DNA from: Octopus bimaculoides
Lineage: Eukaryota
Direction: 5' to 3'
Assembly (NCBI RefSeq): GCF_001194135.2
Contig: NC_068993.1
Coordinates: 36,002,198-36,066,197 of the forward strand
DNA: 64,000 nucleotides
In this document: in pieces, positions 16,813-62,167 of the stretch
Position numbering within the stretch: position 1 is the stretch's first letter
How the letters are laid out: every line of letters starts with the position of its first letter
The notes under the pieces: generated by a model
Databases searched by the model: none
The model's input: the letters and a program-made list of their open reading frames with translations, nothing else
Told to the model about the DNA's origin: nothing
Made by a program: the position numbers and the translations under genes

Positions 16813-17458
<646 letters not shown>

Positions 17459-17468
17459 NNNNNNNNNN

Positions 17469-18320
17469 TGTTTCTGTTTTTAGATTCCACATTCGAGTTA
17501 CCTCTATTTCCAGGTCTTTGTATTTTGAAAGTTTCTCCATTTCTTTTAGGGAAACGTTGTCATCTGCTGGTATTGATACATCAAGTAGAAAGCATTCTTT
17601 TCTTCATGATTTCTGACAACTATATCTGGCCTATTAGCCTTACAACTATATCTGGCCTATTAGCCTTAATTTCTCTATCTGTGTGCATTGGCATATTTCC
17701 CAGAGTATGGTTGTTTTCTCGTTTTCTGTGACCCTTTTCTGACGTGTGTCTATACCATCTTTTTTCTGTTGTTATTCCATAGTGTTGGCATAGCTTCCAG
17801 TGTATGTAGATCCCAGCTCTGTCGCGTTTGATGTCATCCATGAATAATAAGTGGTTGACTTTTTGTAGGCGGCTTTTGAATACATACTCAGCCTTTGCTT
17901 TCCTCGGAATCAATGTTACTGGTATCATGCACAGTACAAAGATCAGTGGGAACAGGCAGTCCCCTTGGAAGATGCCTCTCCTGGTTTCTATTGACCCTAA
18001 ACTTCTTCCATATGCTGTTAGTTCGGTCCTCCACTTCGCCACACTTTTTCCAAGCAATCGCTCAACATTCGATGCAATACCAAATAGGTTCATACATTCC
18101 ATAATCCAAGAATGTGGGATCATATCGTACGCCTTACAATAATCGATCCATGACATGGCTGCGTTACTTTTCCTCCTCTTGCAGTTCTAAGTACAGTTTG
18201 TCCTACCAGGAGTTGATCCTTGGTACCTCTGCACTTACGCTTGAAACCCTACTGCTCATGTGGCAGCACTCCATTTTCTCCAGATGTTCGTACATTGACT
18301 CTGCGACTATTCCAGTCAAT
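17469..18320 (-). mobile_element. R4/Dong-clade fragment (copy c), internally deleted
   Basis: ORF 17620..18156: 'WIDYCKAYDMIPHSW', 'GIFQGDCLFPLIF', 'NHLLFMDDIK' fused directly to 'RDRAGIYIHWKLC...ANRPDIVV'. Confidence 0.9.
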
Positions 18321-18375: not shown

Positions 18376-20042
18376 ACTTTTAATCTGCATGTTTGTTACA
18401 GTCACTTGCCGAGACACACCTAGTGTCATGGGGAGAGTGAAGGATAAGAGATGTTACAGTATGACTGAAAGATTGGAAAGGGGAATTAGCGAAATATCTT
18501 CATGTAATACAACACCGATATTTAAATGGTTAGGGTTTTTCTAAGGATGTGGGTAGTGCTTGTCAGTACAATCTGTTAGGTTTCTCTGAGACATGATTCT
18601 CCTGGTATCTTATCTATATGTTTCTGACATCGCTTCTTTATCCTACCTAGGGAACCTGCAATAACAGGAACAGTTCGCGTTTTAAGATGCCACATCTTTT
18701 GTATTTCAATTTCCAGGTCCTTATATTTACTTGGTTTGTCAAATTCCTTGACAGATATATTTTCATCAGTGGGAACACTTACATCTATTAGTCTGTCTAC
18801 AAGTATTTTCTTCCCTTGTCTTTAATAATTATGTCTGGTCAATTAGCCTGGATCGTTCTGTCGCTATTGATTGGAAAATCCCAGAGGATAGGGACATTTT
18901 TACCTTCAACGACTGGCTCAAGGTGATGTTCATACCTGTAAGCAGGAGTGCTGATTTTTTAGTGTGTACATATTTTCCAATGTAAATATTGTCCTACCCT
19001 ATCGTGGCGACTTTTGTATTCATTTGGTGTCAGCACAGAAAATAGCGAGACGAGATGGTCTATTGTTTCGTCAAATGTGTCGCAGAATCTGCATATAGGG
19101 TGAGAGCCGTTTTGAAGAACGTTAGCCTGGTAGCTGTTAGTGAGCAAGCTTTGATCTTGTGCCGCCAATATGAAACCTTCAGTCTCTGCTTTCAGTCCTG
19201 AGCTTCTCAGCCATTGTTGGGTTGTTGCTTGATCTACATCAGCATTTCGAATTCGGAGTATATACTATCCATGCACTCCTCAATTTGTTTCTGCTCGTTC
19301 TTTCTTGCAGTCTGTTTGATTCATTTTGCTTGTTTTGTGGCAGTGATTTCAGGTTCTTCAAATATTTCAGGATTAATGCCAAGTTTCCTTGCGAATTTGC
19401 AAGCTTCCTTGAATGTGATCTTTTGCTGCTTTCATGTTTGCACACAAGTCGCAGCGTCCAGTCCTCTGTACTGGATAAGTACCAGTTCATTGCTATTGTG
19501 GAGGTCTTATAGCACAGTTCTACCTGCATCATTCCTCTTCCCCCATTACTTCTAGGTAGGTACAGATGATCAACATCTGCTTTTGGATGGTGCATGTTCT
19601 TAGATGTTAGTAGTTTTTTTGTCTTCCTGTCAAGCCGTTGGAGTTCTGTAAGATTCCAGTTAATGATGTTAAAACTGTATTGGATTACTGGAAGTGCCCG
19701 AATGTTAATGGCTTCAATGCGATTTTTAGAGTTGATTTCAGTTTTTAGTATGAGTTTTATTCTCCTGTAATATTCCTTTCTTATTTTTCCTTCATGGTAG
19801 GATGTTGTATACCATCTCATTCGTTTATCCCCAGGTATTTGTAATTTTCTTGTGGATCAAGTTCTTTGATGGTAGTGTCGGTATCTAATTTAATGGAAGC
19901 TGTTTGCCTGATCTTACCTCTTACAAAAGTTGCTTTAGCACACTTATCAAGGCCAAAATCCATCCCGATGTCATTACTGAATTCTTTAACAGATGTTTGC
20001 AGCACTACTAGCTCTTCGTTATTTCTAACAAGCAGCTTCACA

Positions 20043-20077: not shown

Positions 20078-21264
20078 NNNNNNNNNNNNNNNNNNNNNNN
20101 NNNNNNNNNNNNNNNNNNNNNNNNNNNNNNNNNNNNNNNNNNNNNNNNNNNNNNNNNNNNNNNNNNNNNNNNNNNNNNNNNNNNNNNNNNNNNNNNNNNN
20201 NNNNNNNNNNNNNNNNNNNNNNNNNNNNNNNNNNNNNNNNNNNNNNNNNNNNNNNNNNNNNNNNNNNNNNNNNNNNNNNNNNNNNNNNNNNNNNNNNNNN
20301 NNNNNNNNNNNNNNNNNNNNNNNNNNNNNNNNNNNNNNNNNNNNNNNNNNNNNNNNNNNNNNNNNNNNNNNNNNNNNNNNNNNNNNNNNNNNNNNNNNNN
20401 NNNNNNNNNNNNNNNNNNNNNNNNNNNNNNNNNNNNNNNNNNNNNNNNNNNNNNNNNNNNNNNNNNNNNNNNNNNNNNNNNNNNNNNNNNNNNNNNNNNN
20501 NNNNNNNNNNNNNNNNNNNNNNNNNNNNNNNNNNNNNNNNNNNNNNNNNNNNNNNNNNNNNNNNNNNNNNNNNNNNNNNNNNNNNNNNNNNNNNNNNNNN
20601 NNNNNNNNNNNNNNNNNNNNNNNNNNNNNNNNNNNNNNNNNNNNNNNNNNNNNNNNNNNNNNNNNNNNNNNNNNNNNNNNNNNNNNNNNNNNNNNNNNNN
20701 NNNNNNNNNNNNNNNNNNNNNNNNNNNNNNNNNNNNNNNNNNNNNNNNNNNNNNNNNNNNNNNNNNNNNNNNNNNNNNNNNNNNNNNNNNNNNNNNNNNN
20801 NNNNNNNNNNNNNNNNNNNNNNNNNNNNNNNNNNNNNNNNNNNNNNNNNNNNNNNNNNNNNNNNNNNNNNNNNNNNNNAATTAAATTAAACAATGGGGTA
20901 AAAAAAAATTGGATATTAATTAATACCAATTTAATACCAGGTAACTAGCACATTAAAAGAATCAGGGAGATTCAGAAAAATATCTGAGATCTCAAGGATT
21001 ATTGTATATGTTTATATAAAGATATATACGAGTATATATACAGGAGACCAGTAGGTGGACTGGTCAAGCGCTAGAAAAAGATCACATGTCATGTGTCTCC
21101 TAAGACCGAATAATTCTCAAAGGGAATTTAGCGAAGCAACAAAAACGTAAAGCGGGCAAGACCAGTGAAAATTACACAAAAAAAAATACAATTATCTGCA
21201 AACTTCGGCGAAATTTGAACTCAGAATATGAAGACGGACGAAATGTGGCTCACCGTCTTTGTAT

Positions 21265-22335
21265 TTGCATATGTTGATAGACATATAGGTATGCACGCAC
21301 GTACACACACACAAACACACTCACACATCACACACAAACACAGACACACACATTAATCTAACTGCATACATTATATATGTAAATATTTGTTTGTGTACAT
21401 GCGTGTATGCTAGTGTATGCATGGGTATGAAGCATCTATGTGTGAAATTCATTCAAGAATTTCTCGTCTAGTCCAGAAATTTCTATATTTCTTCATATTG
21501 TCATTATGACGTCACAATATCGAAAACGTTTTCTTCAAAGCCTTCGTTTCAAATAATATTCAGTCTCTTTCAGCCTTTCGTGGTGATTAGAGGCTAGGGA
21601 ACACCTGAAGACTAGAGTGAAGTCAGAGTCATCTTCACCTTGCTTTTGTGTTTGTGGGGATATACTGAACAGACCCTCACAAGTATGTCCACCACACAAT
21701 TGTTTCCTCGTAACTTTCAGAAAAAAAATGGATATCTTTCAAGGAAATATTCTACAAATTCCTCTCAGATATCGTACATTACAACGATCGGAATTTAATG
21801 TGAAAACAATAGATGTCGCGAACACATATAGAGTGACAGACACCAATTTTTTTCGAAATTTCAAGTTCCATTTTGTGGATATATTTGTTATGTGTGTCAG
21901 TATATATGTGTGTACTTACTTTCGCAAATTTTTCCCGTTTCTTTTACACATTAAATTCCGATATAATTGTACTCTACACCATCTGAGAGGAATTTGTAGA
22001 AAATTTCTTTAAAAATATACCCATTTTTCTGGAAGTTATCAGGAAACACGGGGACACAATTGTGTGAGTCTGGCGTTTTATGCACCTTTGAGTTCTTAAA
22101 CACCCTTTGCAACATGCTGGTTGGTACCATAACATAGTTACAAGGTGTCCGGTATTGTTCCTTCAACCGTATGAACTTTTAGCCAGGCAATTTCAGGGCA
22201 GGAAACCTGGAGGTTGCAACCAGAAACGATATTTCATTCTCGATATATTCACACAGAATATTTCGTTGTAAATAATCGTCTAACTGTAAGGAGATATGAG
22301 AGTAAGGATCGGTAAATAAAAATCACACATGAAAT
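21265..22335 (+). repeat. unclassified interspersed repeat (module A, copy 1) containing a (CA)n tract
   Basis: Aligns with 22852-23319 (direct) and 25185-25760 (inverted, internally deleted). Confidence 0.75.
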
Positions 22336-22339
22336 ATTC

Positions 22340-22545
22340 CTTTCTATTGTAGGAAACAAGGCTTGAAATTAGGTGGAGTGAGTAGTCGATCATATTGACC
22401 CCAACGCTTGACTGATACTTATCTTATCAATCACAAAAGGATCAAACGAACCGTCGACCTCGACAGAATTTGAACGCAGATTGCGAAGGCGGATGAAGTG
22501 CTGCTGGCGTGCTAACCAGTCTGCAGCTTATCACCCTATGAACAC
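22340..22545 (-). mobile_element. tRNA-derived SINE (family 3), diverged
   Basis: Aligns with 37005-37243 ('gtcgacctcgacagaatttgaac', 'gcgtgctaac'). Confidence 0.75.
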
Positions 22546-22851
22546 GAAATAATGGTTACTCAACATATAGTCCACGGGTAGACGCAGAGAGAAGAGTAAA
22601 AACTAGGTAAGTGTTTAAATAAAACACAAGTTTGCTGCCATGGAAACGTTTCATATTTTCTTCATATTTCTTATTATAATAAAAGTGAATTTCTGTCTGT
22701 CTACGACCCCTCTATCTCAGTCGACATTTGCTCTACATAAGACATACTGTACCTTTTTAGAATCAGAATGATCCCGGGATTGGACGAAATGGCGAAAAGC
22801 ATTTTGCCCGGTGTGCTAACGATTCTACCAGCTCACCGCCTTTGTAGCAGT

Positions 22852-23319
22852 ATATGTTGATAAACTGATGGGTATGCACACACACACGCACACACACACA
22901 CACACACACACATGCGCACAAATGCGTATATACACACAAATACACGCACACACACACACATTAATGCAAATACATACTTCATATGTATAAATATATAGAA
23001 AAAAGAAAAAAAAACATTAAGATATTTTGAGAGGAATTGCGTGCGCATGTAGCGTCTATCTGTGAAATTCATTCAAGAATTTCTCGTCTAGTCCAGAGAT
23101 TCCTATATTTCTTCATATTGTCATTATGACGTCACAATATCGAAAACGTTTTTTCTCCAAGGCCTCCGTTTCAAATAATATTCAGTCCCTTTCAACCTTT
23201 CGCGGTGATTAGAGGCTAGGGAATGTGTGAGCCGGGGGACGCACCTGAAGACTAGAGTGAAGTCAGAGTCATCTTCACCTTGTTTTTGATGTTTATAGGG
23301 ATATTTTGAGCAGACCCTC
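22852..23319 (+). repeat. module A, copy 2 (partial)
   Basis: 'tgtgaaattcattcaagaatttctcgtctagtccag...tatgacgtcacaatatcgaaaacg...gaagactagagtgaagtcagagtcatcttcacc' nearly identical to 21441-21670; preceded by a minus-strand SINE head at about 22760-22850. Confidence 0.8.
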
Positions 23320-23646
23320 AGCTTGGCAAATTCATGTCTTCTTGGTCGGCGTTTGTTAGATGACATCAGAGATGAAGGGGAGATAAATGACATTCACTTC
23401 GTTAATTTTACGTCCAGGTCAAAAGCTGACCAACAGTTGGAATTCAACTTGGGACTGGAACAATAGAATAATTGCATTATAGAATTAATTCTCCTCCATC
23501 CTTAACCTCTGATCAAACACCAGCAGGGCATATAATCATTATTATAGTTATGCTATTTAGCTGTCCTTAGCTTTGTGTCGCAGGCCCAGTTAATCTTCCG
23601 CAGGAGCTAGTTTAAAAGTCCGCACGGAATACAGCTTTTAAGCTAG
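23320..23646 (+). mobile_element. Helitron-like module B, copy 2
   Basis: Starts 'agcttggcaaattca' and ends 'ccgcacggaatacagcttttaagCTAG|t'; same ends as 16388-16693. Confidence 0.65.
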
Positions 23647-27426: not shown

Positions 27427-27479
<53 letters not shown>

Positions 27480-27733
27480 ATAAGCACACATACACACACA
27501 TGAAGGTGTGATCGTAAAAACAAATAACCACAGACTTGAAGAAAAAAAATTAACTGAATGGATATTTATAAAGAAATGAGTGTAATATATAATTTTCTGT
27601 TTGAGTTGAAAGCTAAATTATGAACGAAATATCTATCACTTCATCTTAAGAATCGTCGTAAAAATAATAATAATGATGATGATGATAATAATAATAATCT
27701 AGCATAACTTTTTTATCAAATACACGCACGGTG

Positions 27734-29189: not shown

Positions 29190-29395
29190 CTACGAAGATA
29201 CACCTCAATATCTGTCCATAGGTATGTTTTGCCTCCACTTTCTGACTTTCTACCTCTACTGTAATGGCCTCTACTCCTCAGAACTAGTCTCGTACTTCCA
29301 CATCTTAGGCACACTTGCCCCATTCGTATCTCCACCCCCCATCACTCTTGCTGCGTCCAACCCTCTTAGCTTGCACTAACCACTACACTCAGATA
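29190..29395 (-). repeat. module C copy
   Basis: About 200 bp highly similar to 30130-30316 ('atctgtccataggtatgtttt...gctgcgtccaaccctcttagcttgcactaaccactacactcag'). Confidence 0.85.
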
Positions 29396-30029: not shown

Positions 30030-30320
30030 TCCCACATCTAAGATGGTGCTGCTATGCACATAGACAACACACGATATGATCCGCGTCCAAAAAAGAACCA
30101 CTCGACTGATTGGCTTTCAGTAACTGACAGATACACCCCAGTATCTGTCCATAGGTATGTTTTGTCTCCACTTTCTGACTTTCTGTCTTTACTGTAATGG
30201 CCTCAGAACTGGTCTCGAACCTCCACATCTTAGGCACACCTGCCCCATTCGTATCACTACCCCCATCAATCTTGCTGCGTCCAACCCTCTTAGCTTGCAC
30301 TAACCACTACACTCAGTCTT
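30030..30320 (-). repeat. module C copy
   Basis: Direct repeat of 29190-29395; inverted diverged copy at 24300-24560. Confidence 0.85.
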
Positions 30321-31602
30321 TCTTCATCCGAACGCCGGTCCATTGAACTTTTCAGATCTTCGCCCTGCTCATATTTTTCCTATGAATGTTGACCTGCAAC
30401 TGCTTAAACATTTGCACTATCAAGCTCACCAGTCTCAGAAGGGCCTACAAAAATCTTAGGCATTGTTCCTTACTCCAAACTCAGTAAGTATTTAAAGAAT
30501 TAGATATTTCAATACCGAATTGTTTAATGATTTGTTTAATCAAAGAAAGGTCTCAGTTTTGAATTAAATGTCTTTAAAGAAAATAGTTTTGAAAACAAAA
30601 GAAAATAATTTACATTTATATTCATTGATTTTCATTCATAAAGGAAATTTTACAATTCAAAATTGAAAGAAATGTCATTTTAATTGAATTTTAAAACGAT
30701 TTATTGTTGTAATAAACGAACAAATTCCTTCCCTCTTTACTAAAATAAGCATTCGATTTACTATAAAGCAGAAACAGTGGCTGAGGTGCAATAAATTATA
30801 TTTGCCACAGACCGTCCTGAAATACAATATCGGAAAGTCTGGTAGCTCCAAAGACAGAGAACGTAGTCAAATATGGTGATATGGTTTTGTTTGTTTTGTT
30901 AGTTTTAGTGTAGATTAATGTTGTGTTAATCAATAAGATGAAATATTTATTTGTGATTTTTTTCAGGTGAAGATAAATTTGATGGATAAACGAAGAGAAA
31001 TCCGAAATGAACAGCAAACAATTTCTGCAGAAGAATCTGATAAGACTATTACATTTATCCGGTGTTCAAACCCAATAGCTATCTTTCATCTTTGATTTTC
31101 AGAAGACAAAATGGACAGGCAAAAAAAGGTGGGGAAAGAAAAAGTTAACGACGAATCAATGTACAGTCAATTGAAAGCGGATAAGTCTATAAAGGAAGAA
31201 ATATAAAAAGAGTTATAAATCGGTAGTATCCACCAAAAAGTAGTAGAGCTCAATGTTGAAGCACTTAGAGATACGCATCAATATATGTATGTATGTATAN
31301 NNNNNNNNNNNNNNNNNNNNNNNNNNNNNNNNNNNNNNNNNNNNNNNNNNNNNNNNNNNNNNNNNNNNNNNNNNNNNNNNNNNNNNNNNNNNNNNNNNNN
31401 NNNNNNNNNNNNNNNNNNNNNNNNNNNNNNNNNNNNNNNNNNNNNNNNNNNNNNNNNNNNNNNNNNNNNNNNNNNNNNNNNNNNNNNNNNNNNNNNNNNN
31501 NNNNNNNNNNNNNNNNNNNNNNNNNNNNNNNNNNNATCTATATATACAAAGAGAGAGTGGGGAGGAGAGAGACTTTTCTCTCTAATATTTACATCCCATT
31601 AT

Positions 31603-31800
31603 TTGGCAGAATCATTAGCACACCGGACAAATGTTTAGCGGCATTTCACTCGTTTTACGTTCTAAATTCAAATTCTTTGAAGGTTGACTTTACCTTTCAT
31701 TCTTTCAGGGTCGATAAAATAAATACCAGTCAAGTAATACGGTCGATTTAATCGACTTTCCTCCTCTTAAAAAATAACTAGTTCTGTGCAAAAACTTGTA
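31603..31800 (+). mobile_element. tRNA-derived SINE (family 3)
   Basis: 'ttggcagaatcattagcac...ttctaaattcaaattc...ggttgactttacctttcattctttcagggtcgataaaat'. Confidence 0.8.
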
Positions 31801-31875: not shown

Positions 31876-32357
31876 GCTCTTCCTACAGCAGTAAGAGTAT
31901 TTTAACTCTTATTTCTAGCGATGTAGGTGCTTCGACACCCTCAGTCACACTTAGCGACGATTGATAATTTCCTTTATGGTACGACATTGCACCTAGCTGT
32001 TTATATTAATATTTTATATACACATTAGCATTCCGCTAACTCACCCATAAATTATAATAAATACATATATGCTAACAGGCGGAATTAGCAGTACATGTGC
32101 CATTCGAGCAGTCCTCACTGACGATGCCTACAGAATAGGCGAAACTAGATGTTTAGTCTAAAGATTTTCGAGTCGGTCATGTGTTGGCTAGCTCACCTTT
32201 CAGTATGTGTGCATACATATGCGCTCTTCCTACAGTATTAAGTGTATTTTAACTCTTTATTTCTAACAATGTAGGTGCTTCGGTACCCTCAGTAACACTT
32301 AGTGACGATTGAATTTTTCCTGTATGGTATCACGTTGCGCCCAGCTGTTTATATTAA
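31876..32357 (+). mobile_element. retrozyme-like element: ~347-bp unit with ~135-bp terminal direct repeats and an internal hammerhead
   Basis: 31876-32009 repeated at 32223-32357; hammerhead at 32110-32166 between the repeats; no ORF. Confidence 0.7.
32110..32166 (+). ncRNA. type I hammerhead ribozyme with intact catalytic core
   Basis: AGTCCTCA-CTGACGA-T-GCCTA cagaa TAGGC-GAAA-CTAG atgt TTAG-TC-TAAAGATT; GUC triplet, predicted cleavage after C32158; stem I has two A-C mismatches explainable by G>A transitions. Confidence 0.88.
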
Positions 32358-32371
32358 CTGCGTGCGTGTGC

Positions 32372-32445
<74 letters not shown>

Positions 32446-33065
32446 ATAGTTCGGCTCCTGACAACAGAGGCACCTGAAACAATTAGTAAAAGTGTGATAC
32501 AAGGTCCCAGCTCATACTCCCTTGCAAATGACTACTTTGGCTATGTATCCCTGCGTGAGTATGCATGTGTGATGATATCTATGTTTATAACTGTTTATTC
32601 ATGTCCCATTACTTTGAGAGATCAATAAAATAAATACCAATCATTAAAATAACTACAAGATACGATATAATTGACTTAACCCCTAAAAGCGGTACCGATA
32701 ATGTATTTTAGCAACCCCAAGGAAGGCAAGTTGGTGACAGGTGAAATAAGAATGTTTTTCGTGGCTTGGGGTTTTGACTGCCCTTTTTAGTATGTAAGAA
32801 GACCATTTAATGGTCTTCTCTTCGTGTATAAATTTTTATACACTCATATACATATATACATATATATATAAGTTTCAGCCATTGGACTGCGCTCCATACT
32901 GGAGCACCACCTTGAAAGGTTTAGTCGAAATAATCGATCTCCAGTGCACATTGTTTTTTAATCCGATACTTATTCTATGTTTCTTTGGCTGGACGTAAGC
33001 AAACCGACACCGGTTGTCAAGAGCTGGTGACGACAATTACACACACACTTACACACAGACATATA

Positions 33066-34115
33066 TTGGGTCATTCCATTAATGTGGGGGGTTTTTTCAA
33101 TTGCTTGAGCTAAAAGTCGGAGGGGGACGGGATACTTTGTCCTTATTCTTAGTGCTACTTTTAAAGAGTGAAGTTCGATTTTAACAGTTATTTTTTCAAA
33201 GCTATAATGGAAGTGACAAAGGAGCATCATATTCGGCATATTTTGCTTTATGAGTTCAATAAAGGCAAAAACGCAACGGAAAGAGCGAGGAATATTAAAT
33301 GCAGTATATGGAGATCGGACAATAAGCATAAGCTAGTGTCAACGGTGGTTACAGCAATTCCGAGCTGGAAACTACAGCCTAGAAGATGTATTCCTCACAA
33401 ACTTTCAGAGTTTGATCGCGCTCAGGGATTGAATGTGTGCTCTTCTTTGCTGTCACGTCTCACGAATGAACCTTTTTTGGACCCAATAATGACCGGTGAC
33501 GAAAAATGGGTTCTCTACAAAAATGTCAAGTGCTGAAGACAGTGAGTAGGGAAAGGAGAAACAACGGCACCCTAAGCTAAAGGTCTTCACACACGTAAGG
33601 TGTTGTTATCTGTTTGGTGGGATATGAAAGATTTAGTCCACTTTGAACTTTTAAACCCAAACCAAACGATAACAAAGATCTACTGCGAACAGCTTGAGCG
33701 ACATAAGTCAGCGTTGGAAGAAAAACGACTATCTTTGTTTTCAAGATGAAAGGTGTTCTTCCGTCGGCTATATACAGCGAGGATGACATTTCAAAGGTTG
33801 GAGCAGTTCGAATGGGGAATGATGCTACAGCCACCATATCGCCCCATCTGATTATCATTTATTCCGCAATCTTCAAAATCATTTGGACGGAAAAAATATG
33901 AATTCTGTAAACGAGGTCAAAACAGTACTGGAGGAGTATTTTTCGTCATAGACAAGTGAATTTTGGAAGAGGGGCCTTGCAATTCTACAAGATAGATGGA
34001 AGAGCATCGTAGAAAATGAAGGAGAGTATACTTTAGATTAAAAAGAATTTTGCTTATCTTAATTTTGAAAAATAAAAGAAGTTTAAAAAGCCGCATTATT
34101 TATGGGATGACCCAA
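33066..34115 (+). mobile_element. mariner DNA transposon, TIR-bounded, internally deleted, TA TSD
   Basis: TA|ttgggtcattccat ... atgggatgacccaa|TA; transposase relic 33207-34041: 'HIRHILLYEFNKGKNATE', 'IMTGDEKWVLY', 'KVLLSVWWD', degenerate YSPDL motif; stops and frameshifts. Confidence 0.95.
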
Positions 34116-37004: not shown

Positions 37005-37243
37005 GTTTCTTATTTCTTTATTGCCCACAAAGGGCTAAACATTGAGGGGACAAACAAGGACAGACAAAGGGGTTAAGTCGATTACATCGACCCCAGTGTG
37101 TAACTGGTACTCAATTTATTGACCCCGAAAGGATGAAAGGCAAAGTCGACCTCGGCGGAATTTGAACTCAGAACGTAATGGCAGACGAAATACCGCTAAG
37201 CATTTCACCCGGCGTGTTAACGTTTCTGCCAACTCGCCGCCTT
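37005..37243 (-). mobile_element. tRNA-derived SINE (family 3), young copy
   Basis: Reverse complement 'aaggcggcgagttggcagaaacgttaac...gagttcaaattccgccgaggtcgactttgcctttcatcctttcggggtc'. Confidence 0.9.
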
Positions 37244-37395
37244 GTTTCCTCACAGTTTCTGTCTACCAAATTCACTGACATGGCATTGGTCAGTCCAGGA
37301 CCATAGTAGTAGACACTTATCCAATGTGCCATGCTGTGGAACTGTATCCGAATTTTCGTGGATACAAAACAAGTTTCTTAACCATACATCTATGC
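37244..37395 (-). mobile_element. SINE (family 4)
   Basis: 'cagtttctgtctaccaaattcact...tagtagtagacactt'; matches 49418-49567. Confidence 0.75.
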
Positions 37396-40390: not shown

Positions 40391-41996
40391 AAGTGACGTA
40401 GCCATCTACATAGGTCGGCCCTCTATAGGAACGATGGACTAGCTATCTCAAGCCATATGACAAGCTCAGGAAGAACGTGATAAACATATTCAAAGAGCTC
40501 GGCCTGTCCATGATGATTACTACCAACCTGACTACGATCGATTTCTTTGAAGTAACCTTAGAACTGAAGACGGGCAAATACTACCCCTACAAGAAACCGA
40601 ATGAAGAAGCGGTATATATCCACAAGAGTTCAAACCACCACCACCACCACCGCTGTAATTAGAAACATGGTTGCAAGCATTAGCAAACGATTATCTAGTC
40701 TCTCGGCCAATAGCAAGATCTTTAATAGGGCAGCCCCTACCCCACTACAATGATGCTTTGGCTAGGAACAGATTTTCTGAGAAGCTCACGTATGCGGACG
40801 AACCCCAAACCCCTCTCGTCACCCCAAGAGAATTAGGAAAAGGAAAATAATCTGGTATAACACCTTATTTAAGCTAGTAGTTTCTACCAACATAGCCAGA
40901 AATATTTCCCCAGAGGCCGTAAATATTACAAACTCCTCAAACTCCATAATGTCAAGATAAGCTACTCCTGCCTAGACAACATCACATCTAATATCGCACG
41001 CATCAACAAACGTGAAAACGCGCCCACACAACTCTCGATCCCAACCTGCAACAGTCGAAATCCTACCACCTACCCTCCAGGAAGATCCTGCCCCTCAAGG
41101 GCTGTAGTATACAGAGCCACTCTTACAGCATTCGATAGCATTACTAGGCACTATACAGGAATGACAGCCAATGGTTTCAAGGGAAGTTACTCCCAACACT
41201 TGCATTCATTTAGATCCAGGGACAACGTAAAATCTACTTCTCTGTTGTGCTCTCCCGGGAGGCTTCGTGACCTCCAAGACGAAACACCCTGCATCAAGAG
41301 GATATTGTCGACGGAGCGCCACCATATTCACCCTGCGCCCCTAATTGCCAGTTGTGCCTCCAAGAAAAACTTCATTTCATCTACCAACCCGCAGTATCCA
41401 TCAACAAGAAATATGAGGTAATGTATTGCTGTCACTAGAGGTACACTTTTCTGATAAACTTCAAGCCACTGGCCGCCCACAACCTGGATAGATATACCTC
41501 CTTAGTACCCACCACCTCTAGCACCGCCTGTACCAAGGTCACCATCACAAACTAACCCCCAAGAACAGTAAGGCAAATCACCAATTTCCAACACTCTTTT
41601 ATGCCTGTCTACCCGCATACTCTTACTCCTTGTACATCACCCTTTGTACATAACCGCACGAGTATATATGCACGTGCACGCGCATATGCGTGAGTGCACG
41701 TATCCATCTGCTCACCGTACGCATGCGCACGGGTGTATGTGCACTGGTGTACATGTACGTGCATGTGCGCCCATATACATGTGCACCCGTGCGTATCTAT
41801 GTATGTACATGTGCACACTTGCGTGCTCGAGCCCGCGTGTGCAGGTGCTCGTGTACATATATACATGGAGGCAAAAGTGTGCACGCGCGCGCGTGCGTGT
41901 GTGTGCGCTCGCTCGGATGGGTGAATGTACATCTACACACACATACACGCCCGCATAAGTACGGTCGCATAGTCGCAGATATATGGACATATACAT

Positions 41997-42005
<9 letters not shown>
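40391..42005 (+). mobile_element. Penelope-like element, 3' part (RT C-terminus, GIY-YIG endonuclease, pLTR), degenerate
   Basis: 'LYRNDGLAI' (YRDD motif, 40424-40435), 'YYPYKKPNE', 'RKRKIIWYN', 'NVKISYSC', 'CNSR..CPS..VVYRA..HYTGMTANGFK', 'LQEKLHFI...NKK'; ORF ends at about 41475. Confidence 0.88.
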
Positions 42006-42066
<61 letters not shown>

Positions 42067-42813
42067 NNNNNNNNNNNNNNNNNNNNNNNNNNNNNNNNNN
42101 NNNNNNNNNNNNNNNNNNNNNNNNNNNNNNNNNNNNNNNNNNNNNNNNNNNNNNNNNNNNNNNNNNNNNNNNNNNNNNNNNNNNNNNNNNNNNNNNNNNN
42201 NNNNNNNNNNNNNNNNNNNNNNNNNNNNNNNNNNNNNNNNNNNNNNNNNNNNNNNNNNNNNNNNNNNNNNNNNNNNNNNNNNNNNNNNNNNNNNNNNNNN
42301 NNNNNNNNNNNNNNNNNNNNNNNNNNNNNNNNNNNNNNNNNNNNNNNNNNNNNNNNNNNNNNNNNNNNNNNNNNNNNNNNNNNNNNNNNNNNNNNNNNNN
42401 NNNNNNNNNNNNNNNNNNNNNNNNNNNNNNNNNNNNNNNNNNNNNNNNNNNNNNNNNNNNNNNNNNNNNNNNNNNNNNNNNNNNNNNNNNNNNNNNNNNN
42501 NNNNNNNNNNNNNNNNNNNNNNNNNNNNNNNNNNNNNNNNNNNNNNNNNNNNNNNNNNNNNNNNNNNNNNNNNNNNNNNNNNNNNNNNNNNNNNNNNNNN
42601 NNNNNNNNNNNNNNNNNNNNNNNNNNNNNNNNNNNNNNNNNNNNNNNNNNNNNNNNNNNNNNNNNNNNNNNNNNNNNNNNNNNNNNNNNNNNNNNNNNNN
42701 NNNNNNNNNNNNNNNNNNNNNNNNNNNNNNNNNNNNNNNNNNNNNNNNNNNNNNNNNNNNNNNNNNNNNNNNNNNNNNNNNNNNNNNNNNNNNNNNNNNN
42801 NNNNNNNNNNNNN

Positions 42814-42849
<36 letters not shown>

Positions 42850-43315
42850 TGTGTGTGTGTAGGTATTGGAAAGTTTCTCTCAAACACTATCTGCTCGAAA
42901 TGTAAGACAAATTGCGATCACAATTGATTTAGCAATAACGATCTAATTAGTTAAACTTATTTGATGAGAAGAGGAAAGCACTAAATTAATGCGTAATAAC
43001 ATATTAATCTGGTTTTGATAAGTACGGTGGAATTTCTGAAGTGTTTTGGTGTAATTAGACCTTCTCAACAAAACAAAGCCGACGCCTTACTTGCCAGATT
43101 AGAGGTAGGACAATTGTTATATTGGTGTGTATTAACGTACGTGAGTAGACGTCAAAAATTGTCGAAATATTTGGGGATATATTCACACATATCCATATAT
43201 ACAACTATAGATGAGCATCTGCATGTGTATGTGTCCATGTGTGTGTGCGCTCAAATACCTATGTATATATACACATATATATGCACTCAAATACATATAT
43301 ATATGTACACATATA

Positions 43316-43358
<43 letters not shown>

Positions 43359-44539
43359 NNNNNNNNNNNNNNNNNNNNNNNNNNNNNNNNNNNNNNNNNN
43401 NNNNNNNNNNNNNNNNNNNNNNNNNNNNNNNNNNNNNNNNNNNNNNNNNNNNNNNNNNNNNNNNNNNNNNNNNNNNNNNNNNNNNNNNNNNNNNNNNNNN
43501 NNNNNNNNNNNNNNNNNNNNNNNNNNNNNNNNNNNNNNNNNNNNNNNNNNNNNNNNNNNNNNNNNNNNNNNNNNNNNNNNNNNNNNNNNNNNNNNNNNNN
43601 NNNNNNNNNNNNNNNNNNNNNNNNNNNNNNNNNNNNNNNNNNNNNNNNNNNNNNNNNNNNNNNNNNNNNNNNNNNNNNNNNNNNNNNNNNNNNNNNNNNN
43701 NNNNNNNNNNNNNNNNNNNNNNNNNNNNNNNNNNNNNNNNNNNNNNNNNNNNNNNNNNNNNNNNNNNNNNNNNNNNNNNNNNNNNNNNNNNNNNNNNNNN
43801 NNNNNNNNNNNNNNNNNNNNNNNNNNNNNNNNNNNNNNNNNNNNNNNNNNNNNNNNNNNNNNNNNNNNNNNNNNNNNNNNNNNNNNNNNNNNNNNNNNNN
43901 NNNNNNNNNNNNNNNNNNNNNNNNNNNNNNNNNNNNNNNNNNNNNNNNNNNNNNNNNNNNNNNNNNNNNNNNNNNNNNNNNNNNNNNNNNNNNNNNNNNN
44001 NNNNNNNNNNNNNNNNNNNNNNNNNNNNNNNNNNNNNNNNNNNNNNNNNNNNNNNNNNNNNNNNNNNNNNNNNNNNNNNNNNNNNNNNNNNNNNNNNNNN
44101 NNNNNNNNNNNNNNNNNNNNNNNNNNNNNNNNNNNNNNNNNNNNNNNNNNNNNNNNNNNNNNNNNNNNNNNNNNNNNNNNNNNNNNNNNNNNNNNNNNNN
44201 NNNNNNNNNNNNNNNNNNNNNNNNNNNNNNNNNNNNNNNNNNNNTATATATATATATATATGCATATGTAAGTATATATATATATATATATGAATAGAAT
44301 CAAATCAACCTTATTTCGAGGTGTACGGATAACATCGGACTGATTATGGATTCCGTTTCTCGCACGATCCGTTGTTTCAGGTGACAATGGAGATGAATTT
44401 CGGATTTGGCTGTACTGGAGTTCAAACACGATGGATCACACATTTTTACTTATCTCATCAGGTCATGTACTTTCATCCCCGACATTTACTCGTACCCCCT
44501 ACTGAGTGGTAATTACACATTCATAATGGTCAGAGAGAG

Positions 44540-48195: not shown

Positions 48196-48408
48196 TCTTT
48201 TCTACTCTAGGCACAAGGCCTGAAATTTGGGCGTGCGGGGCACTCGATTAGATCGACCTCAGAACGCAATTGGTGCTTAATTTATCGACCCCGAAAGGAT
48301 GAAAGGCAAAGTCGACCTCCGCGGAATTTGAACTCAGATCGTAAAGACAGATGAAATACCGCTAAACATTTCGCCCAGCGTGCTAACGTTTCTGCCAGCT
48401 CGCTGCCT
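48196..48408 (-). mobile_element. tRNA-derived SINE (family 3)
   Basis: Matches 37005-37243. Confidence 0.88.
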
Positions 48409-49007
48409 TTTTTTTTTTTTTGCCGACCAATATTGAGTGCAAAAGGATTAAGATAAACAGAGAGGAAAAATAAAAAGAGAAAGAACAACTTAAAAAGGAA
48501 AATGGTCTATGTTTGAAGGTTTAAAATTTTAGAAAATAATATTCAGCAAATGTGGTACAGAATATAGGATATTCAAGATATAGCAGTGTATAAGCTATGA
48601 CAGACAATTATCCGGAAAGATAGGGAGTGTCGGATTATGGGTGATAGAAGGAAAATAGGTAGAGGAACCGAACTAAATCTTTAGTTTGGGGACAAAATAT
48701 TGTATTCACTGAAAATTTAGACAAAAGTAACCCAATACCTTCTACATGGATGTATAAGTGTGCGTGTGAGTATTTGCGAGTGTGCGTGTGTGCGCGCGCG
48801 CGTGTGTGTGTGTAATACAGGTGTCTTTATTCATGAGATTATGATGTCTGCGAATCATAAAATATACTCAAAGCGTTTATTGGCAGCATGTAGGAGTTTT
48901 ATTTCAGAAATTACAACTTTCAAGATGCTTTGTCTGTAGAACAGCTCAGATGGATTCAGATTCTTTACACTGTATAAATGTAAAAGACTGTAAAAGACCA
49001 TTGCAAT

Positions 49008-52938: not shown

Positions 52939-53521
52939 CTCTAGAATGACAGTGAGTTGATAGAAACGAGTATGCTGAAGAATTTAGTTTTATCCCTCTA
53001 ATTTATGAATTCAAAACTTGTGACAATGATCGACTTTACCTTTCAACTAGATTAAATAAATACCAGTCATAATCTCAAGTTGATTAGCTCGACCGTTCCT
53101 AATGCGCTCAGCAAATAGTATCATAATCTTTTGTAATAAGTCATTTACATTTAGAAACACCGAATTACTGTTAACTAAAAGGTGGTCATTTCAAATCCTA
53201 TGCATATCTTTTGTTATACTTCGGAAACGGATATTTCAGCTACACCTGATTTCCTTGAGAGTGATTAGCGTTCAAATCAGGAGAATATATCTCTCTTTTC
53301 CTCTTAACTATGAGGAGTAACAGGAGTTGATTGTTGAACCTCATAGAGACTTGGGTTCCGTTAAATAATTAATTTCCATCATTTGCTTTGAAGAGTATTA
53401 AGGAATAAGGAGTATTAAAGAATAAGGAGTATAAGGAAATGACTATGGTGAAATAAAAGTTACATTCCAAAGGAATCAAACTGAAGATCACAGTCTAGAT
53501 TCGATGTCGAATATAATTATT

Positions 53522-53977
53522 TCCACCACGCCAAATCGCAGCCTACCAGCAAATACATGGGACTTTTACGTTATCTATGTGTGGTCGATAATGTTTATTA
53601 CACTAGCGCTGCTTTTATTTCATATTTGAATTTATTCAAACGTATATATTGTCCGGGTATACCGGCACATAACGTTTACACTATATGTATATAAGTCGTG
53701 GAATGGTGATCTATTCACCTACGATTTGGTTCGGTATGTGATGTTGATAAGCCACAAAATTGGCGAAAACTCAATATCCATCACTCCCGAATGGAATTTG
53801 GTATGAGTTTTCTCACCAGTCCATGACTTTCAGGTGTTTTAACATCCGCCGCTTTGAGAGAGTAATCTCCACCTCACCAAATTGCAACTTACCGGCAAAT
53901 ATACAGAGTATGTTCGTTAAGTATGTATGGTCGATAATGTTTATTTCACTAGCGCTGGTTCTATTTCATATATGAAT
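53522..53977 (+). mobile_element. second retrozyme-like element: ~346-bp unit with ~110-bp terminal direct repeats
   Basis: 53522-53630 repeated at 53868-53977; degenerate hammerhead at 53738-53784 between them. Confidence 0.55.
53738..53784 (+). ncRNA. degenerate type I hammerhead ribozyme
   Basis: GTGATG-TTGATAA-GCCA caaaat TGGC-GAAA-actcaata-TC-CATCAC; perfect 6-bp stem I and 4-bp stem II; core differs from CTGATGA by C>T and G>A; stem III poorly paired. Confidence 0.65.
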
Positions 53978-56135
53978 AATTATTTCAATTTATTTACATA
54001 AATAATGTTCTTGAGAAAAATATGAATGTCACAACTTTTATTTTGTTTCTTCTCTTTAAGATATTCATGGAAGACGTATTGAATTCCTAGGAGTGAAGTA
54101 ATCAGATCTGTTTCGCCGGTCCATTTTAGAGAGGTAAATATAACAATGACTTCTGTAATACACAAGACTGCCACAAATAGTTAGGAGGAAGAAAATTGTC
54201 AAATAAATCGACTTCAGTATCCTGAGATGCCCATATCTAAAAGATCTCGGAGAGATAGAACAAAAAGTAGATTCGACCTTGGCAAGATTTGAACTCAGGA
54301 AGTTAAGCGAACCCTAAATACCACAATGCAGTCACACGACTGTCTAGAAATAGCAAGCAAACTTCCTTCAAATAACACCTCATCGTCTTTGAAAAGAAAA
54401 TCCCCGTGCCTAGAAACAAAATGGTAAAGTCCCTAGCAGAATACATTTGACTAACAACATCTAGCATGAGATTGATGTCCCTTGTGCAGTCACTAACTCT
54501 GCTCGTTTTTTATTGACCAGCACGTCCTGCTATGCACAGCCCTAACTAGCTCAGAAATATAATTACTTGATATATATATATATATATATATATANNNNNN
54601 NNNNNNNNNNNNNNNNNNNNNNNNNNNNNNNNNNNNNNNNNNNNNNNNNNNNNNNNNNNNNNNNNNNNNNNNNNNNNNNNNNNNNNNNNNNNNNNNNNNN
54701 NNNNNNNNNNNNNNNNNNNNNNNNNNNNNNNNNNNNNNNNNNNNNNNNNNNNNNNNNNNNNNNNNNNNNNNNNNNNNNNNNNNNNNNNNNNNNNNNNNNN
54801 NNNNNNNNNNNNNNNNNNNNNGGATAGTATCTATCCAGTATACTGCTGGGAGGGTACAAACCAGATTGGCAAAATAACATAGTCTGCCATAGACACCTGT
54901 GCTTTGGTTCTTTCTTTCTTTTTCTTTCTTCTTTTTTTGTCACTTTTGCTATGAATTAAATTAATGAATTCAACGGGATACATTGTCTGCAAGTAGTTGG
55001 GTTCAGCATATTATCCTCCATTTTCTAATTGTTATATATATATACGGGTCTACTATGTTGTAGCTATTTGTTCACTGACTTGCATAAACTTGCGTCTGTC
55101 CTTACATACTGCCTTCTAAGCGATAAACATACCATCACCTACGCTCAACAACACAGGATATCACTATACTAACCACGAAGCTTTCCATGGACTATATGTT
55201 GAAATATAGATGTTGCTTATTCTACCAACACCTGTAGACTGCACCGAGGGATGTACCACAGCCAGTTGTGCAGTTTCAGACCTGCGAGGGATCGATGCAA
55301 GATGCGTCGAAACGATGGTTGTGAGCAATAAAGTTACTTGTATGTTCCAAAAGTAAAAATTTGACTTTATCTGTTGCATAAGCACAGATATTTGTATATC
55401 GACGCACGCCTTTGCTTCGTATGGATATGTATAAATATCTGTGATTGTTTCTTTGAATATTGTGCTGAGGATGGGATATAAGCTATTTTTTACTTCTTTA
55501 ATCCAGAAATTGGACCCAATACACAATTTACTGTGAAGTTTTATTTTATATCTTTCATTTGCTCGCTCACAACCCATGTTTTGTGGGAGTTATAACAGTG
55601 GCTTTTTAGTGCTTTTGGCGTCTTCTTTCAGCATGTTGGAGAAGATTATTTCCTGATCCTGTTCCCTTTAATATAATTATATAATTATATATTTAATTAT
55701 TAATTTTAGTGTATATATATATATATATATATATATATTTGAAAAGACAACACGAAACCGGTTATTTCTCCAAATATAATGTTTATATACCCAAAAGTTT
55801 TATAACATTTTTCTGACATAACAATTTAAATATATACTTTAACGATATAACACAAGCCTTCTGTAGTTTTTTCACTCTTGTTTATCTTTTATACATCCAA
55901 CCACGTGCTTTCACATACCAACTTTCTCACCTATATATNNNNNNNNNNNNNNNNNNNNNNNNNNNNNNNNNNNNNNNNNNNNNNNNNNNNNNNNNNNNNN
56001 NNNNNNNNNNNNNNATATATATATATATATATATATACAATTAAGATTCAATTGAATTAGGCACTTAAGTTGAGGCACCAAGTCAGTCCGGTATTGTACA
56101 GTATTGTCCACATAGCTCGAAGTTAGGTGAATAAT

Positions 56136-61907: not shown

Positions 61908-62110
61908 CCTTTCTACTGTAGGCACAAGGCCTGAAATTTGGAGGCAGGAAGCTAGTAGATTACATTAACCCCAGTGCTCAACTCGTGCTTATTTTATTAC
62001 TCTTGAAAGAAAGAAAGGTAAAGTTGTCGTCGGCGGATTTTTGAACTCGAAACGTAAAGCCTGAAGAAACCCCGCCAAGCGTTTTGTTTGGCGTGCTAAC
62101 GAGTCTGACA
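61908..62110 (-). mobile_element. tRNA-derived SINE (family 3)
   Basis: Matches 48196-48408. Confidence 0.82.
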
Positions 62111-62167
62111 GTAATCGATGGATAATATAGATATATATTAGCGACAGAGGCAGTATTGATACCGAGA

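What the first reader, a model, noticed from the sequence alone, without database searches (positions are those of the whole stretch)
31876..32357. Retrozyme-like ~1.4-mer with an intact hammerhead core
A ~135-bp sequence is directly repeated 347 bp apart (31876-32009 and 32223-32357). Between the repeats is a full type I hammerhead: CUGACGA, 5-bp stem II, GAAA, looped stem III and a GUC site. There is no ORF and no tRNA head. A monomer plus a partial second copy is what reverse transcription running more than once around a ~347-nt circular RNA would leave (inference). This is not a minimal PLE-type hammerhead, because stem III has a real loop, so it should be able to work as a monomer. Stem I here carries two G>A-type mismatches, so this copy may be weakened while the family consensus is active.
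Basis: partly seen in the sequence, partly recalled or inferred. Interest (0 to 1): 0.85.

Follow-up and report, generated by a model that had tools for sequence, protein, structure and literature searches.

The report
Decayed hammerhead-ribozyme repeat element (retrozyme-type)
This is an old, probably dead genomic copy of a small non-coding mobile repeat that carries a self-cutting hammerhead RNA motif, a kind of element already known from many animals, and a second, older copy of the same design lies 21 kb away in the same window.

Summary
Arms 31876-32009 and 32223-32357 are direct repeats (116/134 identical, period 347). Between them lies a type I hammerhead-like motif with every core base present and cleavage site C32158.

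- An extra U (32125) sits between the core and stem II.
- No Rfam hammerhead model recognises the motif, even at E<=10.
- As it stands, the ribozyme fold is about 11 kcal/mol worse than the best fold.

On its own, a motif of this quality is near chance level for a Gb-sized genome (about 1-30 per Gb).

The deciding evidence is a second locus at 53514-53990. It has a 346-bp-period partial tandem of about 1.35 units. At the same relative position it carries a relic that Rfam Hammerhead_HH9 matches over its full length (37.2 bits, E=8.6e-6 for the whole window).

So the finding is a genuine but decayed member of the known class of animal (non-LTR) retrozymes. With 1.39 units and one ribozyme, it cannot release a circle itself.

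Both loci end at about the same phase, and locus 1 abuts a (TG)n tract. Both features also fit 3'-anchored, Penelope-like partial-tandem insertion.

No other genomic copies could be fetched.

The parts
31876..32009 (+). Locus 1, direct-repeat arm A (134 nt). In the partial-tandem reading it is the 3' part of a 5'-truncated upstream unit.
   Evidence: 86.6% identical to 32223-32357, spacing 347
32010..32222 (+). Locus 1, single-copy segment B (213 nt) that holds the hammerhead motif
   Evidence: no copy elsewhere in the window
32102..32173 (+). Type I hammerhead-like motif. Distal stem I AUUCGA/UCGAGU, 4x3 internal loop GCAG/UUU, proximal stem I UCCUCA/UAAAGA (two A.C mismatches), core CUGACGA 32118-32124, extra U32125, stem II 32126-32140, GAAA 32141-32144, stem III 32144-32157, predicted cleavage 3' of C32158.
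   Evidence: Custom model R1 aligns it end to end at 12.1 bits, E 0.36. No Rfam hit.
32223..32357 (+). Locus 1, direct-repeat arm A' (135 nt), the 3' end of the element
32358..32444 (.). (TG)n microsatellite directly abutting the 3' end of the element. It is either the insertion target or a 3' tail.
   Evidence: There are about 11 (TG)n tracts in 58 kb, so direct abutment by chance is roughly 0.004 (my estimate).
53514..53640 (+). Locus 2, first direct-repeat arm
   Evidence: 78% identical to 53862-53990, spacing 346, K2P 0.26
53726..53801 (+). Locus 2, hammerhead relic. Distal stem I GUUCG/CGAAU, 4x3 loop GUAU/UCC, proximal stem I GUGAUG/CAUCAC, mutated core UUGAUAA, stem II GCCA/UGGC with loop CAAAAU, GAAA 53765-53768, degenerate stem III, UC at 53777-53778.
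   Evidence: Rfam Hammerhead_HH9 RF02275, 37.2 bits (gathering score 52), model 1-77/77. E = 6.7e-8 in 501 nt, 1.8e-8 in 131 nt, 8.6e-6 in the whole window. R1 gives 11.0 bits.
53862..53990 (+). Locus 2, second direct-repeat arm

Best explanation
Locus 1 (31876-32357) is a fossil insertion of a small non-coding, non-autonomous retroelement of the animal non-LTR retrozyme class. Its unit is about 347 nt and carries one type I hammerhead ribozyme.

How such elements work, as established for the class in PMC7229834 and inferred here:
- Master copies lie in tandem and are transcribed as multimers.
- Each hammerhead cuts 3' of its GUC.
- The unit-length RNA, with 5'-OH and 2',3'-cyclic phosphate ends, is closed into a circle by an RtcB-type tRNA ligase.
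- RNA copies are reverse-transcribed and integrated by the machinery of an autonomous element, probably Penelope-like.

This locus holds 1.39 units and only one ribozyme, so its transcript could be cut once but could not release a unit. The ribozyme is weakened by two A.C mismatches in stem I and has an extra U next to stem II. It is therefore most likely inactive debris.

The arms differ by K2P 0.15, so the insertion is old. Locus 2 (53514-53990) is an older insertion of the same design from a different sequence family.

Shown here: the repeat architecture, the motif, the second locus and its Rfam match.

Inferred: transcription, cleavage, circularisation, the retrotransposition route, and that the arms were identical at insertion.
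For: - The repeat and the motif are as described.
- Among the 6 close direct-repeat pairs in the window, only two have a period of 346-347. Both carry a hammerhead-type motif on the + strand in the single-copy segment. G12 lies 132 nt (locus 1) and 129 nt (locus 2) after the end of the first arm.
- The locus 2 motif is matched end to end by Rfam Hammerhead_HH9 at 37.2 bits, E = 8.6e-6 for the whole window. It is the only notable hit not caused by microsatellites.
- A motif of locus 1 quality is expected 7e-6 times by chance in a 213-nt segment.
- Both motifs share a distal stem, a 4x3 internal loop and a 6-bp proximal stem I.
- The strand CCUCACUGACGAUGCC matches 15/16 bases of the validated axolotl Ax353 retrozyme ribozyme. 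That ribozyme also has a U directly after the core (text).
- Unit length (347), GC content (39%), and the absence of ORF, LTR signals and tRNA fit the published class definition.
- The circular monomer folds somewhat better than shuffles (z = -1.8; 7 of 200 shuffles fold as well).
- The 3' end abuts a (TG)n tract. Microsatellite insertion bias and partial tandems are known for Penelope-like elements.
Against: - No Rfam hammerhead model reports locus 1, even at E<=10.
- A model built from HH9 plus locus 2 does not find it. A model built from four validated retrozyme ribozymes gives only 12.1 bits, E 0.36, rank 3 in the window.
- The hammerhead fold of this copy is 11 kcal/mol above the MFE.
- Units 1 and 2 show no significant sequence similarity outside the ribozyme. 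Their kinship therefore rests on architecture.
- No sequence-similar copy of unit 1 was found in the window or in the metagenome and viral collections.
- There are no target-site duplications.
- The locus has one ribozyme, not the two or more that define an excisable retrozyme.
Confidence: 0.7

Rival explanations
1. Chance motif. An ordinary local tandem duplication of non-functional DNA happens to contain a hammerhead-like string.
For: Motifs of this quality are expected about 1-30 times per Gb by chance. No Rfam hit. The fold is unfavourable. No other sequence-similar copies.
Against: A second partial tandem of 346-bp period in the same window carries an Rfam-significant hammerhead relic at the same relative position. 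Expected chance hits in the 213-nt segment are 7e-6.
Confidence: 0.08
2. The element type is the same, but the 1.4-unit form arose by 3'-anchored target-primed reverse transcription of Penelope type. In that route a full unit (32010-32357) is preceded by a 5'-truncated unit (31876-32009) after a template jump or read-through on a multimeric RNA. It did not arise from a polymerase circling a circular RNA at random phase.
For: Both loci end at nearly the same phase: 199 nt (locus 1) and 206-212 nt (locus 2) after the cleavage-site C. They start at different phases: 282 nt versus 259-262 nt before it. The locus 1 3' end abuts a (TG)n tract. Partial tandems with a truncated upstream copy, and microsatellite insertion bias, are described for Penelope-like elements. 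Animal retrozymes have been proposed to derive from Penelope-like pLTRs.
Against: There are only two loci, and agreement of the 3' phase within about 13 nt has roughly 0.08 probability by chance. No Penelope-like ORF was recognised in the window; the only RT domain found is a generic RVT_1 fragment. The unit ends do not coincide with the ribozyme cleavage site.
Confidence: 0.35
3. Eroded remnant of a once longer tandem (satellite-like) array, cut down by deletions and by the growth of the (TG)n tract.
For: Published retrozymes occur as arrays from dimers to tens of units. The arms have diverged by 15-26%.
Against: Two independent loci both have about 1.35-1.39 units in nearly the same phase. 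Homology ends sharply at both borders.
Confidence: 0.12
4. A miniature LTR-type element like plant retrozymes or TRIMs, in which the 135-bp arms act as LTRs.
For: Direct repeats flank an internal segment.
Against: The ribozyme is in the internal part, not in the arms. It is type I, not type III. The arms lack TG..CA ends, and no PBS- or PPT-like sequence lies next to them (read). There is no 4-6 bp target-site duplication.
Confidence: 0.03

Closest known systems
Metazoan non-LTR retrozymes (Cervera & de la Pena 2020, PMC7229834). This class includes the older 'hammerhead satellites': newt satellite 2, Schistosoma Sm-alpha and cave-cricket pDo500.
   Same: Type I hammerhead inside a repeat unit of 170-400 bp (347 here). 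GC below 50%. No ORF, LTR, PBS or PPT. Head-to-tail repetition. The ribozyme has a real stem III, as in invertebrate members. The mussel units are 350-390 bp.
   Different: This locus has only 1.39 units and one ribozyme. An extra U follows A9. Stem I is mismatched. There is no sequence similarity to the coral, mussel or axolotl units outside 16 nt of the ribozyme. Copy number and circular RNA are unknown.
Rfam Hammerhead_HH9 (RF02275): type I hammerheads conserved in amniote introns and similar to those of metazoan retroelements (PMC6155905).
   Same: Locus 2 aligns over the whole model. It shares the distal stem, 4x3 internal loop, 6-bp proximal stem I and an A-rich loop 2. Locus 1 has the same stem I geometry.
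   Different: Locus 2 scores below the gathering score (37.2 versus 52) and has C3>U and G8>A in the core. Locus 1 gives no hit at all. Here the motif sits in a mobile repeat, not in a conserved intron.
Penelope-like elements and their pseudo-LTRs (PMC8557442; bioRxiv 10.64898/2026.07.22.740005).
   Same: Partial-tandem insertions, with a truncated copy in front of a full copy. Insertion next to microsatellites. Hammerheads in the non-coding terminal parts. Proposed to be the source of animal retrozymes.
   Different: No RT/GIY-YIG ORF is attached. The ribozyme is not the minimal, stem-III-less type that acts as a dimer. It lies outside the repeated part.
Plant LTR retrozymes (PMC4918200).
   Same: Non-autonomous, non-coding, hammerhead-bearing elements thought to spread through circular RNA.
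   Different: Plant elements carry type III ribozymes, one in each ~350-bp LTR, with a PBS, a PPT and 4-bp target-site duplications. None of these features is present here.

Membership tests
Hammerhead ribozyme, type I (Rfam clan CL00010) | Conserved core CUGANGA ... GAAA ... UH | tested here: met
   Locus 1 has CUGACGA 32118-32124, GAAA 32141-32144 and U32157-C32158. The caveat is one extra U (32125) between A9 and G10.1. An extra core nucleotide has precedent in a natural hammerhead (De la Pena & Flores 2001; the title is cited in PMC6155905, and the details are from memory). Locus 2 fails this feature (UUGAUAA).
Hammerhead ribozyme, type I (Rfam clan CL00010) | Three helices around the core, with II and III closed by loops and I open | tested here: inconclusive
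   Stems II and III are 5 bp each. Proximal stem I is 6/8 paired with two A.C mismatches. The hammerhead fold is -6.2 kcal/mol against an MFE of -17.6 kcal/mol, and the MFE of the 75-nt stretch is not the hammerhead fold.
Hammerhead ribozyme, type I (Rfam clan CL00010) | Reaches the gathering score of an Rfam hammerhead model | tested here: not met
   Locus 1 gives no hit at the gathering score or at E<=10. Locus 2 scores 37.2 bits with HH9 against a gathering score of 52, but with E = 8.6e-6.
Hammerhead ribozyme, type I (Rfam clan CL00010) | Site-specific self-cleavage 3' of H17 | not testable with these tools
   This needs an in vitro transcription and cleavage assay.
Metazoan non-LTR retrozyme | Type I hammerhead inside a short (about 170-400 bp) low-GC repeat unit without ORF, LTR, PBS or PPT | tested here: met
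   Unit 347 nt, 39% GC. No ORF longer than 40 codons. No tRNA. No LTR features.
Metazoan non-LTR retrozyme | Tandem arrangement with at least two ribozymes, so that a unit can be excised | tested here: not met
   Locus 1 has 1.39 units and locus 2 has 1.35 units, each with one ribozyme. These are at best monomer-like derivatives, which are reported for the class.
Metazoan non-LTR retrozyme | Many related copies in the genome | tested here: inconclusive
   The window holds one further locus of the same design, but without sequence similarity.
Metazoan non-LTR retrozyme | Expressed as unit-length linear and circular RNA with a highly self-paired fold | not testable with these tools
   Only a weak proxy is available. 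The circular monomer MFE is -77.4 kcal/mol, z = -1.8, with 60% of bases paired.
Penelope-like element pLTR / minimal hammerhead | Minimal hammerhead (stem III of 0-2 bp, acting as a dimer) in the repeated terminal part of an element with an RT-GIY-YIG ORF | tested here: not met
   Stem III is 5 bp with a loop, and the motif lies outside the repeated arms. There is no adjacent RT ORF. The nearest RVT_1 fragment is at 17620-18156.
Plant LTR retrozyme | Type III hammerhead in each LTR, plus a PBS, a PPT and a 4-bp target-site duplication | tested here: not met
   There is a single type I motif in the internal part, and no target-site duplication.

The most novel reading that the evidence does not exclude
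These two loci could represent a retrozyme variant whose normal genomic form is a fixed-phase unit of about 1.4 lengths. One canonical type I hammerhead would be flanked by ~120-135-bp direct repeats, always ending at the same point of the unit and often at a microsatellite. Such a form would be made by Penelope-type 3'-anchored reverse transcription. It would be a direct genomic footprint of how animal retrozymes are integrated, and a structural bridge between Penelope pseudo-LTRs and retrozymes, in a lineage where active masters might still produce abundant ~347-nt circular RNAs.
Probability: 0.2. Interest if true: 0.5.

Novelty: new member of a known kind. Interest (0 to 1): 0.3.

Why it matters
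Hammerhead-bearing repeats and their circular RNAs are an established but thinly annotated component of animal genomes. This window shows two things.

- Decayed copies escape standard Rfam annotation. Locus 1 gives no hit, and locus 2 falls below the gathering score. The architecture (period, ribozyme position, 3' phase) can still identify them.
- If a genome-wide survey confirmed the shared 3' phase and the microsatellite junction, they would bear on an open question: which machinery integrates animal retrozymes, and whether the template is circular or linear.

For this locus alone the practical meaning is modest. It is non-coding repeat debris, not a functional ribozyme gene.

Tried and rejected
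- Rfam on locus 1 at the gathering score and at E<=10 found no hammerhead family.
- Custom covariance model R1, built from the four experimentally validated retrozyme ribozymes in the supplement of PMC7229834, aligns locus 1 end to end. The score is only 12.1 bits, E 0.36, rank 3. The two higher hits are local alignments that skip the interior.
- Model R2 (Rfam HH9 consensus plus locus 2) does not find locus 1. Its second hit, 33603-33665 (-), 19.4 bits, lies inside a mariner-like remnant and shows no similarity to unit 2, so I judged it chance.
- BLASTN and nhmmer of both units against the window found no further copies and no similarity between locus 1 and locus 2.
- BLASTN against the coral, mussel and two axolotl retrozymes found only a 16-nt match in the ribozyme.
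- Exact-pattern scans of metagenome and viral contigs with the ribozyme and arm patterns found 0 matches.
- I tried to reach the source genome through proteins. Two exact ORF look-ups found nothing. A homology search with a retrotransposon ORF gave at most 70% identity, on unrelated ENA contigs. The species is therefore not in the collection. I dropped the idea of using translated pieces of the unit as a proxy search rather than spend more fleet time on it.
- Target-site duplications: none.
- tRNA/SINE head: none.
- LTR-type reading: rejected on layout.
- TRF does not report the 347-bp period because there are fewer than about 1.8 copies.
- The species could not be identified. The window is a draft eukaryotic scaffold with 17 N gaps, 37.5% GC, many microsatellites, LINE RT fragments and a mariner remnant. 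My impression that it is an invertebrate, perhaps a mollusc, is untested.

Full report
**What is at the coordinates**

The window is a draft eukaryotic scaffold. It has 17 runs of N, 37.5% GC and many microsatellites.

The two arms, 31876-32009 and 32223-32357, are direct repeats:
- 116 of 134 aligned bases are identical, with 10 transitions, 8 transversions and one 1-nt indel (K2P 0.149).
- The start-to-start spacing is 347-348 nt.
- Homology stops sharply at both outer borders.
- The second arm runs straight into a (TG)n tract at 32358-32444.

The longest stop-free stretch in any frame is 40 codons. ARAGORN finds no tRNA in the whole window.

The left flank, 31603-31758, is a SINE-like dispersed repeat with several other copies in the window. 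It ends 118 nt before the element.

**The hammerhead motif**

Read directly from the sequence and recovered by my descriptor scan as the only hit in the window on either strand:

| Part | Coordinates | Sequence |
|---|---|---|
| Proximal stem I, 5' strand | 32112-32117 | UCCUCA |
| Core | 32118-32124 | CUGACGA |
| Extra unpaired base | 32125 | U |
| Stem II | 32126-32140 | GCCUA/UAGGC, loop CAGAA |
| GAAA | 32141-32144 | GAAA |
| Stem III | 32144-32157 | ACUAG/UUAGU, loop AUGU |
| Cleavage-site C | 32158 | C |
| Proximal stem I, 3' strand | 32159-32164 | UAAAGA |

- The proximal stem I has two A.C mismatches.
- Beyond a 4x3 internal loop (GCAG/UUU), a distal stem AUUCGA/UCGAGU can form.
- The validated axolotl Ax353 retrozyme ribozyme reads CCUCACUGAUGAUGCC, against CCUCACUGACGAUGCC here. 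It also has a U directly after the core, there as a U.U pair.

**How strong the motif is on its own**

It is weak.
- Rfam 15 reports no hammerhead family at the gathering score. It reports none at E<=10 either, in an 801-nt or a 101-nt search.
- A covariance model I built from the four experimentally validated retrozyme ribozymes aligns the site end to end, but at only 12.1 bits, E 0.36.
- The 75-nt stretch does not fold into the hammerhead as its MFE (z = +0.2).
- The hammerhead fold is -6.2 kcal/mol, against an MFE of -17.6 kcal/mol. With G in place of the two mismatched A's it would be -19.2 kcal/mol.

Simulations on random sequence of the same composition give these chance rates:

| Motif requirement | Expected by chance |
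|---|---|
| Perfect core, stems II and III >= 4 bp | 0.014 per window |
| Stems II and III >= 5 bp | 0.0018 per window, about 31 per Gb |
| Stem I also >= 6/8 paired | about 1 per Gb |

A genome-wide scan would therefore throw up a few such strings by chance.

**The second locus**

A self-comparison of the window lists six close direct-repeat pairs. Only one other pair has the same period: 53519-53636 and 53865-53984, spacing 346. After alignment the arms extend to 53514-53640 and 53862-53990 (78% identity, K2P 0.26).

My model R1 had already ranked a site between these arms fourth in the window (53738-53784, 11.0 bits).

Rfam's Hammerhead_HH9 model matches 53726-53801 over its whole length at 37.2 bits:
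- E = 6.7e-8 in a 501-nt search.
- E = 1.8e-8 in a 131-nt search.
- E = 8.6e-6 for the whole window, where it is the only notable hit that is not a microsatellite artefact.

The score is below the gathering score of 52. The core is mutated (UUGAUAA, that is C3>U and G8>A) and stem III has decayed. The following parts are intact:
- stem I (GUGAUG/CAUCAC);
- the 4x3 internal loop;
- the distal stem;
- stem II (GCCA/UGGC);
- the A-rich loop 2;
- GAAA.

The review PMC6155905 notes that the amniote intronic hammerheads are very similar to those of metazoan retroelements. HH9 models one of these. That explains why this model is the one that fires.

**Why locus 2 validates locus 1**
- The two loci share the period (346 versus 347), the strand and the size (1.35 versus 1.39 units).
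- They share the place of the ribozyme. G12 lies 129 nt and 132 nt after the end of the first arm.
- They share the stem I geometry.
- A motif of locus 1 quality is expected 7e-6 times by chance in the 213-nt single-copy segment.

I found locus 2 after the fact, so these figures are indicative. The coincidence is still far beyond chance.

Outside the ribozyme the two units have no significant similarity (global z = 1.2, local z = 0.3, nhmmer nothing). A model built from HH9 plus locus 2 does not find locus 1. They are therefore different sequence families of one design, as reported for retrozymes within a single genome.

**What it is**

The design matches the published definition of animal non-LTR retrozymes:
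- a type I hammerhead with a real stem III;
- a repeat unit of 170-400 bp;
- low GC;
- no ORF, LTR, PBS or PPT;
- head-to-tail repetition.

Neither locus has the two ribozymes needed to excise a unit. They are monomer-like derivatives, which the 2026 preprint on vertebrate retrozymes describes as likely non-mobile offspring.

With diverged arms and a damaged ribozyme, locus 1 is a fossil.

**How the 1.4-unit form arose**

Two observations point to a defined 3' end instead:
- The two loci end 199 nt and 206-212 nt after the cleavage-site C. They begin 282 nt and 259-262 nt before it.
- Locus 1 ends exactly at a (TG)n tract. My estimate for that by chance is about 0.004, given 11 such tracts in 58 kb.

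A full unit preceded by a 5'-truncated one, and insertion at microsatellites, are hallmarks of Penelope-like elements. Those elements have been proposed as the source and mobiliser of animal retrozymes.

With only two loci this remains an inference. No Penelope-like ORF was seen in the window, and no target-site duplications were found.

**Limits**

The decisive test is a survey of other genomic copies and a consensus. I could not run it, because the source genome is not in any collection I could search:
- Pattern scans of metagenome and viral contigs found nothing.
- Exact ORF look-ups found nothing.
- A homology search with a retrotransposon ORF from the window found nothing closer than 70% identity.

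**Verdict**

The specific rolling-circle origin and the expectation of activity for this copy are not supported.

This is a new member of a known kind and of modest interest. The only mildly novel angle is the fixed-phase 1.4-unit architecture, as a possible footprint of the integration mechanism.

Noticed in passing
window 53514-53990 (+): A second partial tandem of 346-bp period (1.35 units) carries a hammerhead relic at 53726-53801. Rfam Hammerhead_HH9 matches it at 37.2 bits, E = 8.6e-6 for the whole window, below the gathering score. The core is mutated to UUGAUAA.
   Followed up: yes
window 31603-31758; also 37075-37247 (-), 48244-48413 (-), 22384-22474 (-), 61946-62111: A SINE-like dispersed repeat family of about 155-170 nt, with copies 72-87% identical. 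One copy lies just left of the finding, and a short related piece lies at 32622-32662. No tRNA head was detected by ARAGORN.
   Followed up: partly
window 33168-33536 (+) and onward to about 34000: A mariner-type transposase remnant (Pfam HTH_48, E = 1.4e-8) lies 0.8 kb to the right of the finding. A weak hit of my model R2 at 33603-33665 (-) falls inside it and looks like chance.
   Followed up: partly
window 17620-18156 (-), 19239-19991 (-), 9508-10276 (-), 6656-7233 (+): Fragments of non-LTR retrotransposon ORFs (RVT_1 at 17620-18156). The 193-aa ORF at 19239-19820 has relatives at no more than 70% identity on Mb-sized ENA contigs and in a fish. The host species was not identified.
   Followed up: partly
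window 29196-29392 / 30129-30316; 17054-17348 / 17469-17792; 21248-21679 / 22831-23320; 11811-11939 / 14536-14662: Four other close direct-repeat pairs, with spacings of 933, 415, 1583 and 2725 nt and identities of 72-89%. They are of unknown nature. None has a convincing hammerhead-like hit.
   Followed up: no
whole window, e.g. 27436-27504, 5171-5386, 41976-42046, 43221-43361: Dozens of sub-threshold Rfam hits to mir-297, mir-3149, mir-466, mir-1277 and sno_ZL1 all sit on (TG)n, (TA)n or similar simple repeats. They are artefacts of low-complexity sequence.
   Followed up: partly
window, 17 N runs (e.g. 31300-31535, 42067-42813, 43359-44244): Assembly gaps are mostly bordered by microsatellites or (TA)n/(TG)n tracts. 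This is typical of a short-read draft assembly. One gap ends only 340 nt left of the finding.
   Followed up: no
window 31934-31947 and 32282-32295: Within the arms a small hairpin is kept in both copies through a double change. Arm A has GGUG-CUUCGA-CACC and arm A' has GGUGC-UUCG-GUACC, a cUUCGg-type tetraloop. With only two sequences this is not evidence of selection.
   Followed up: no
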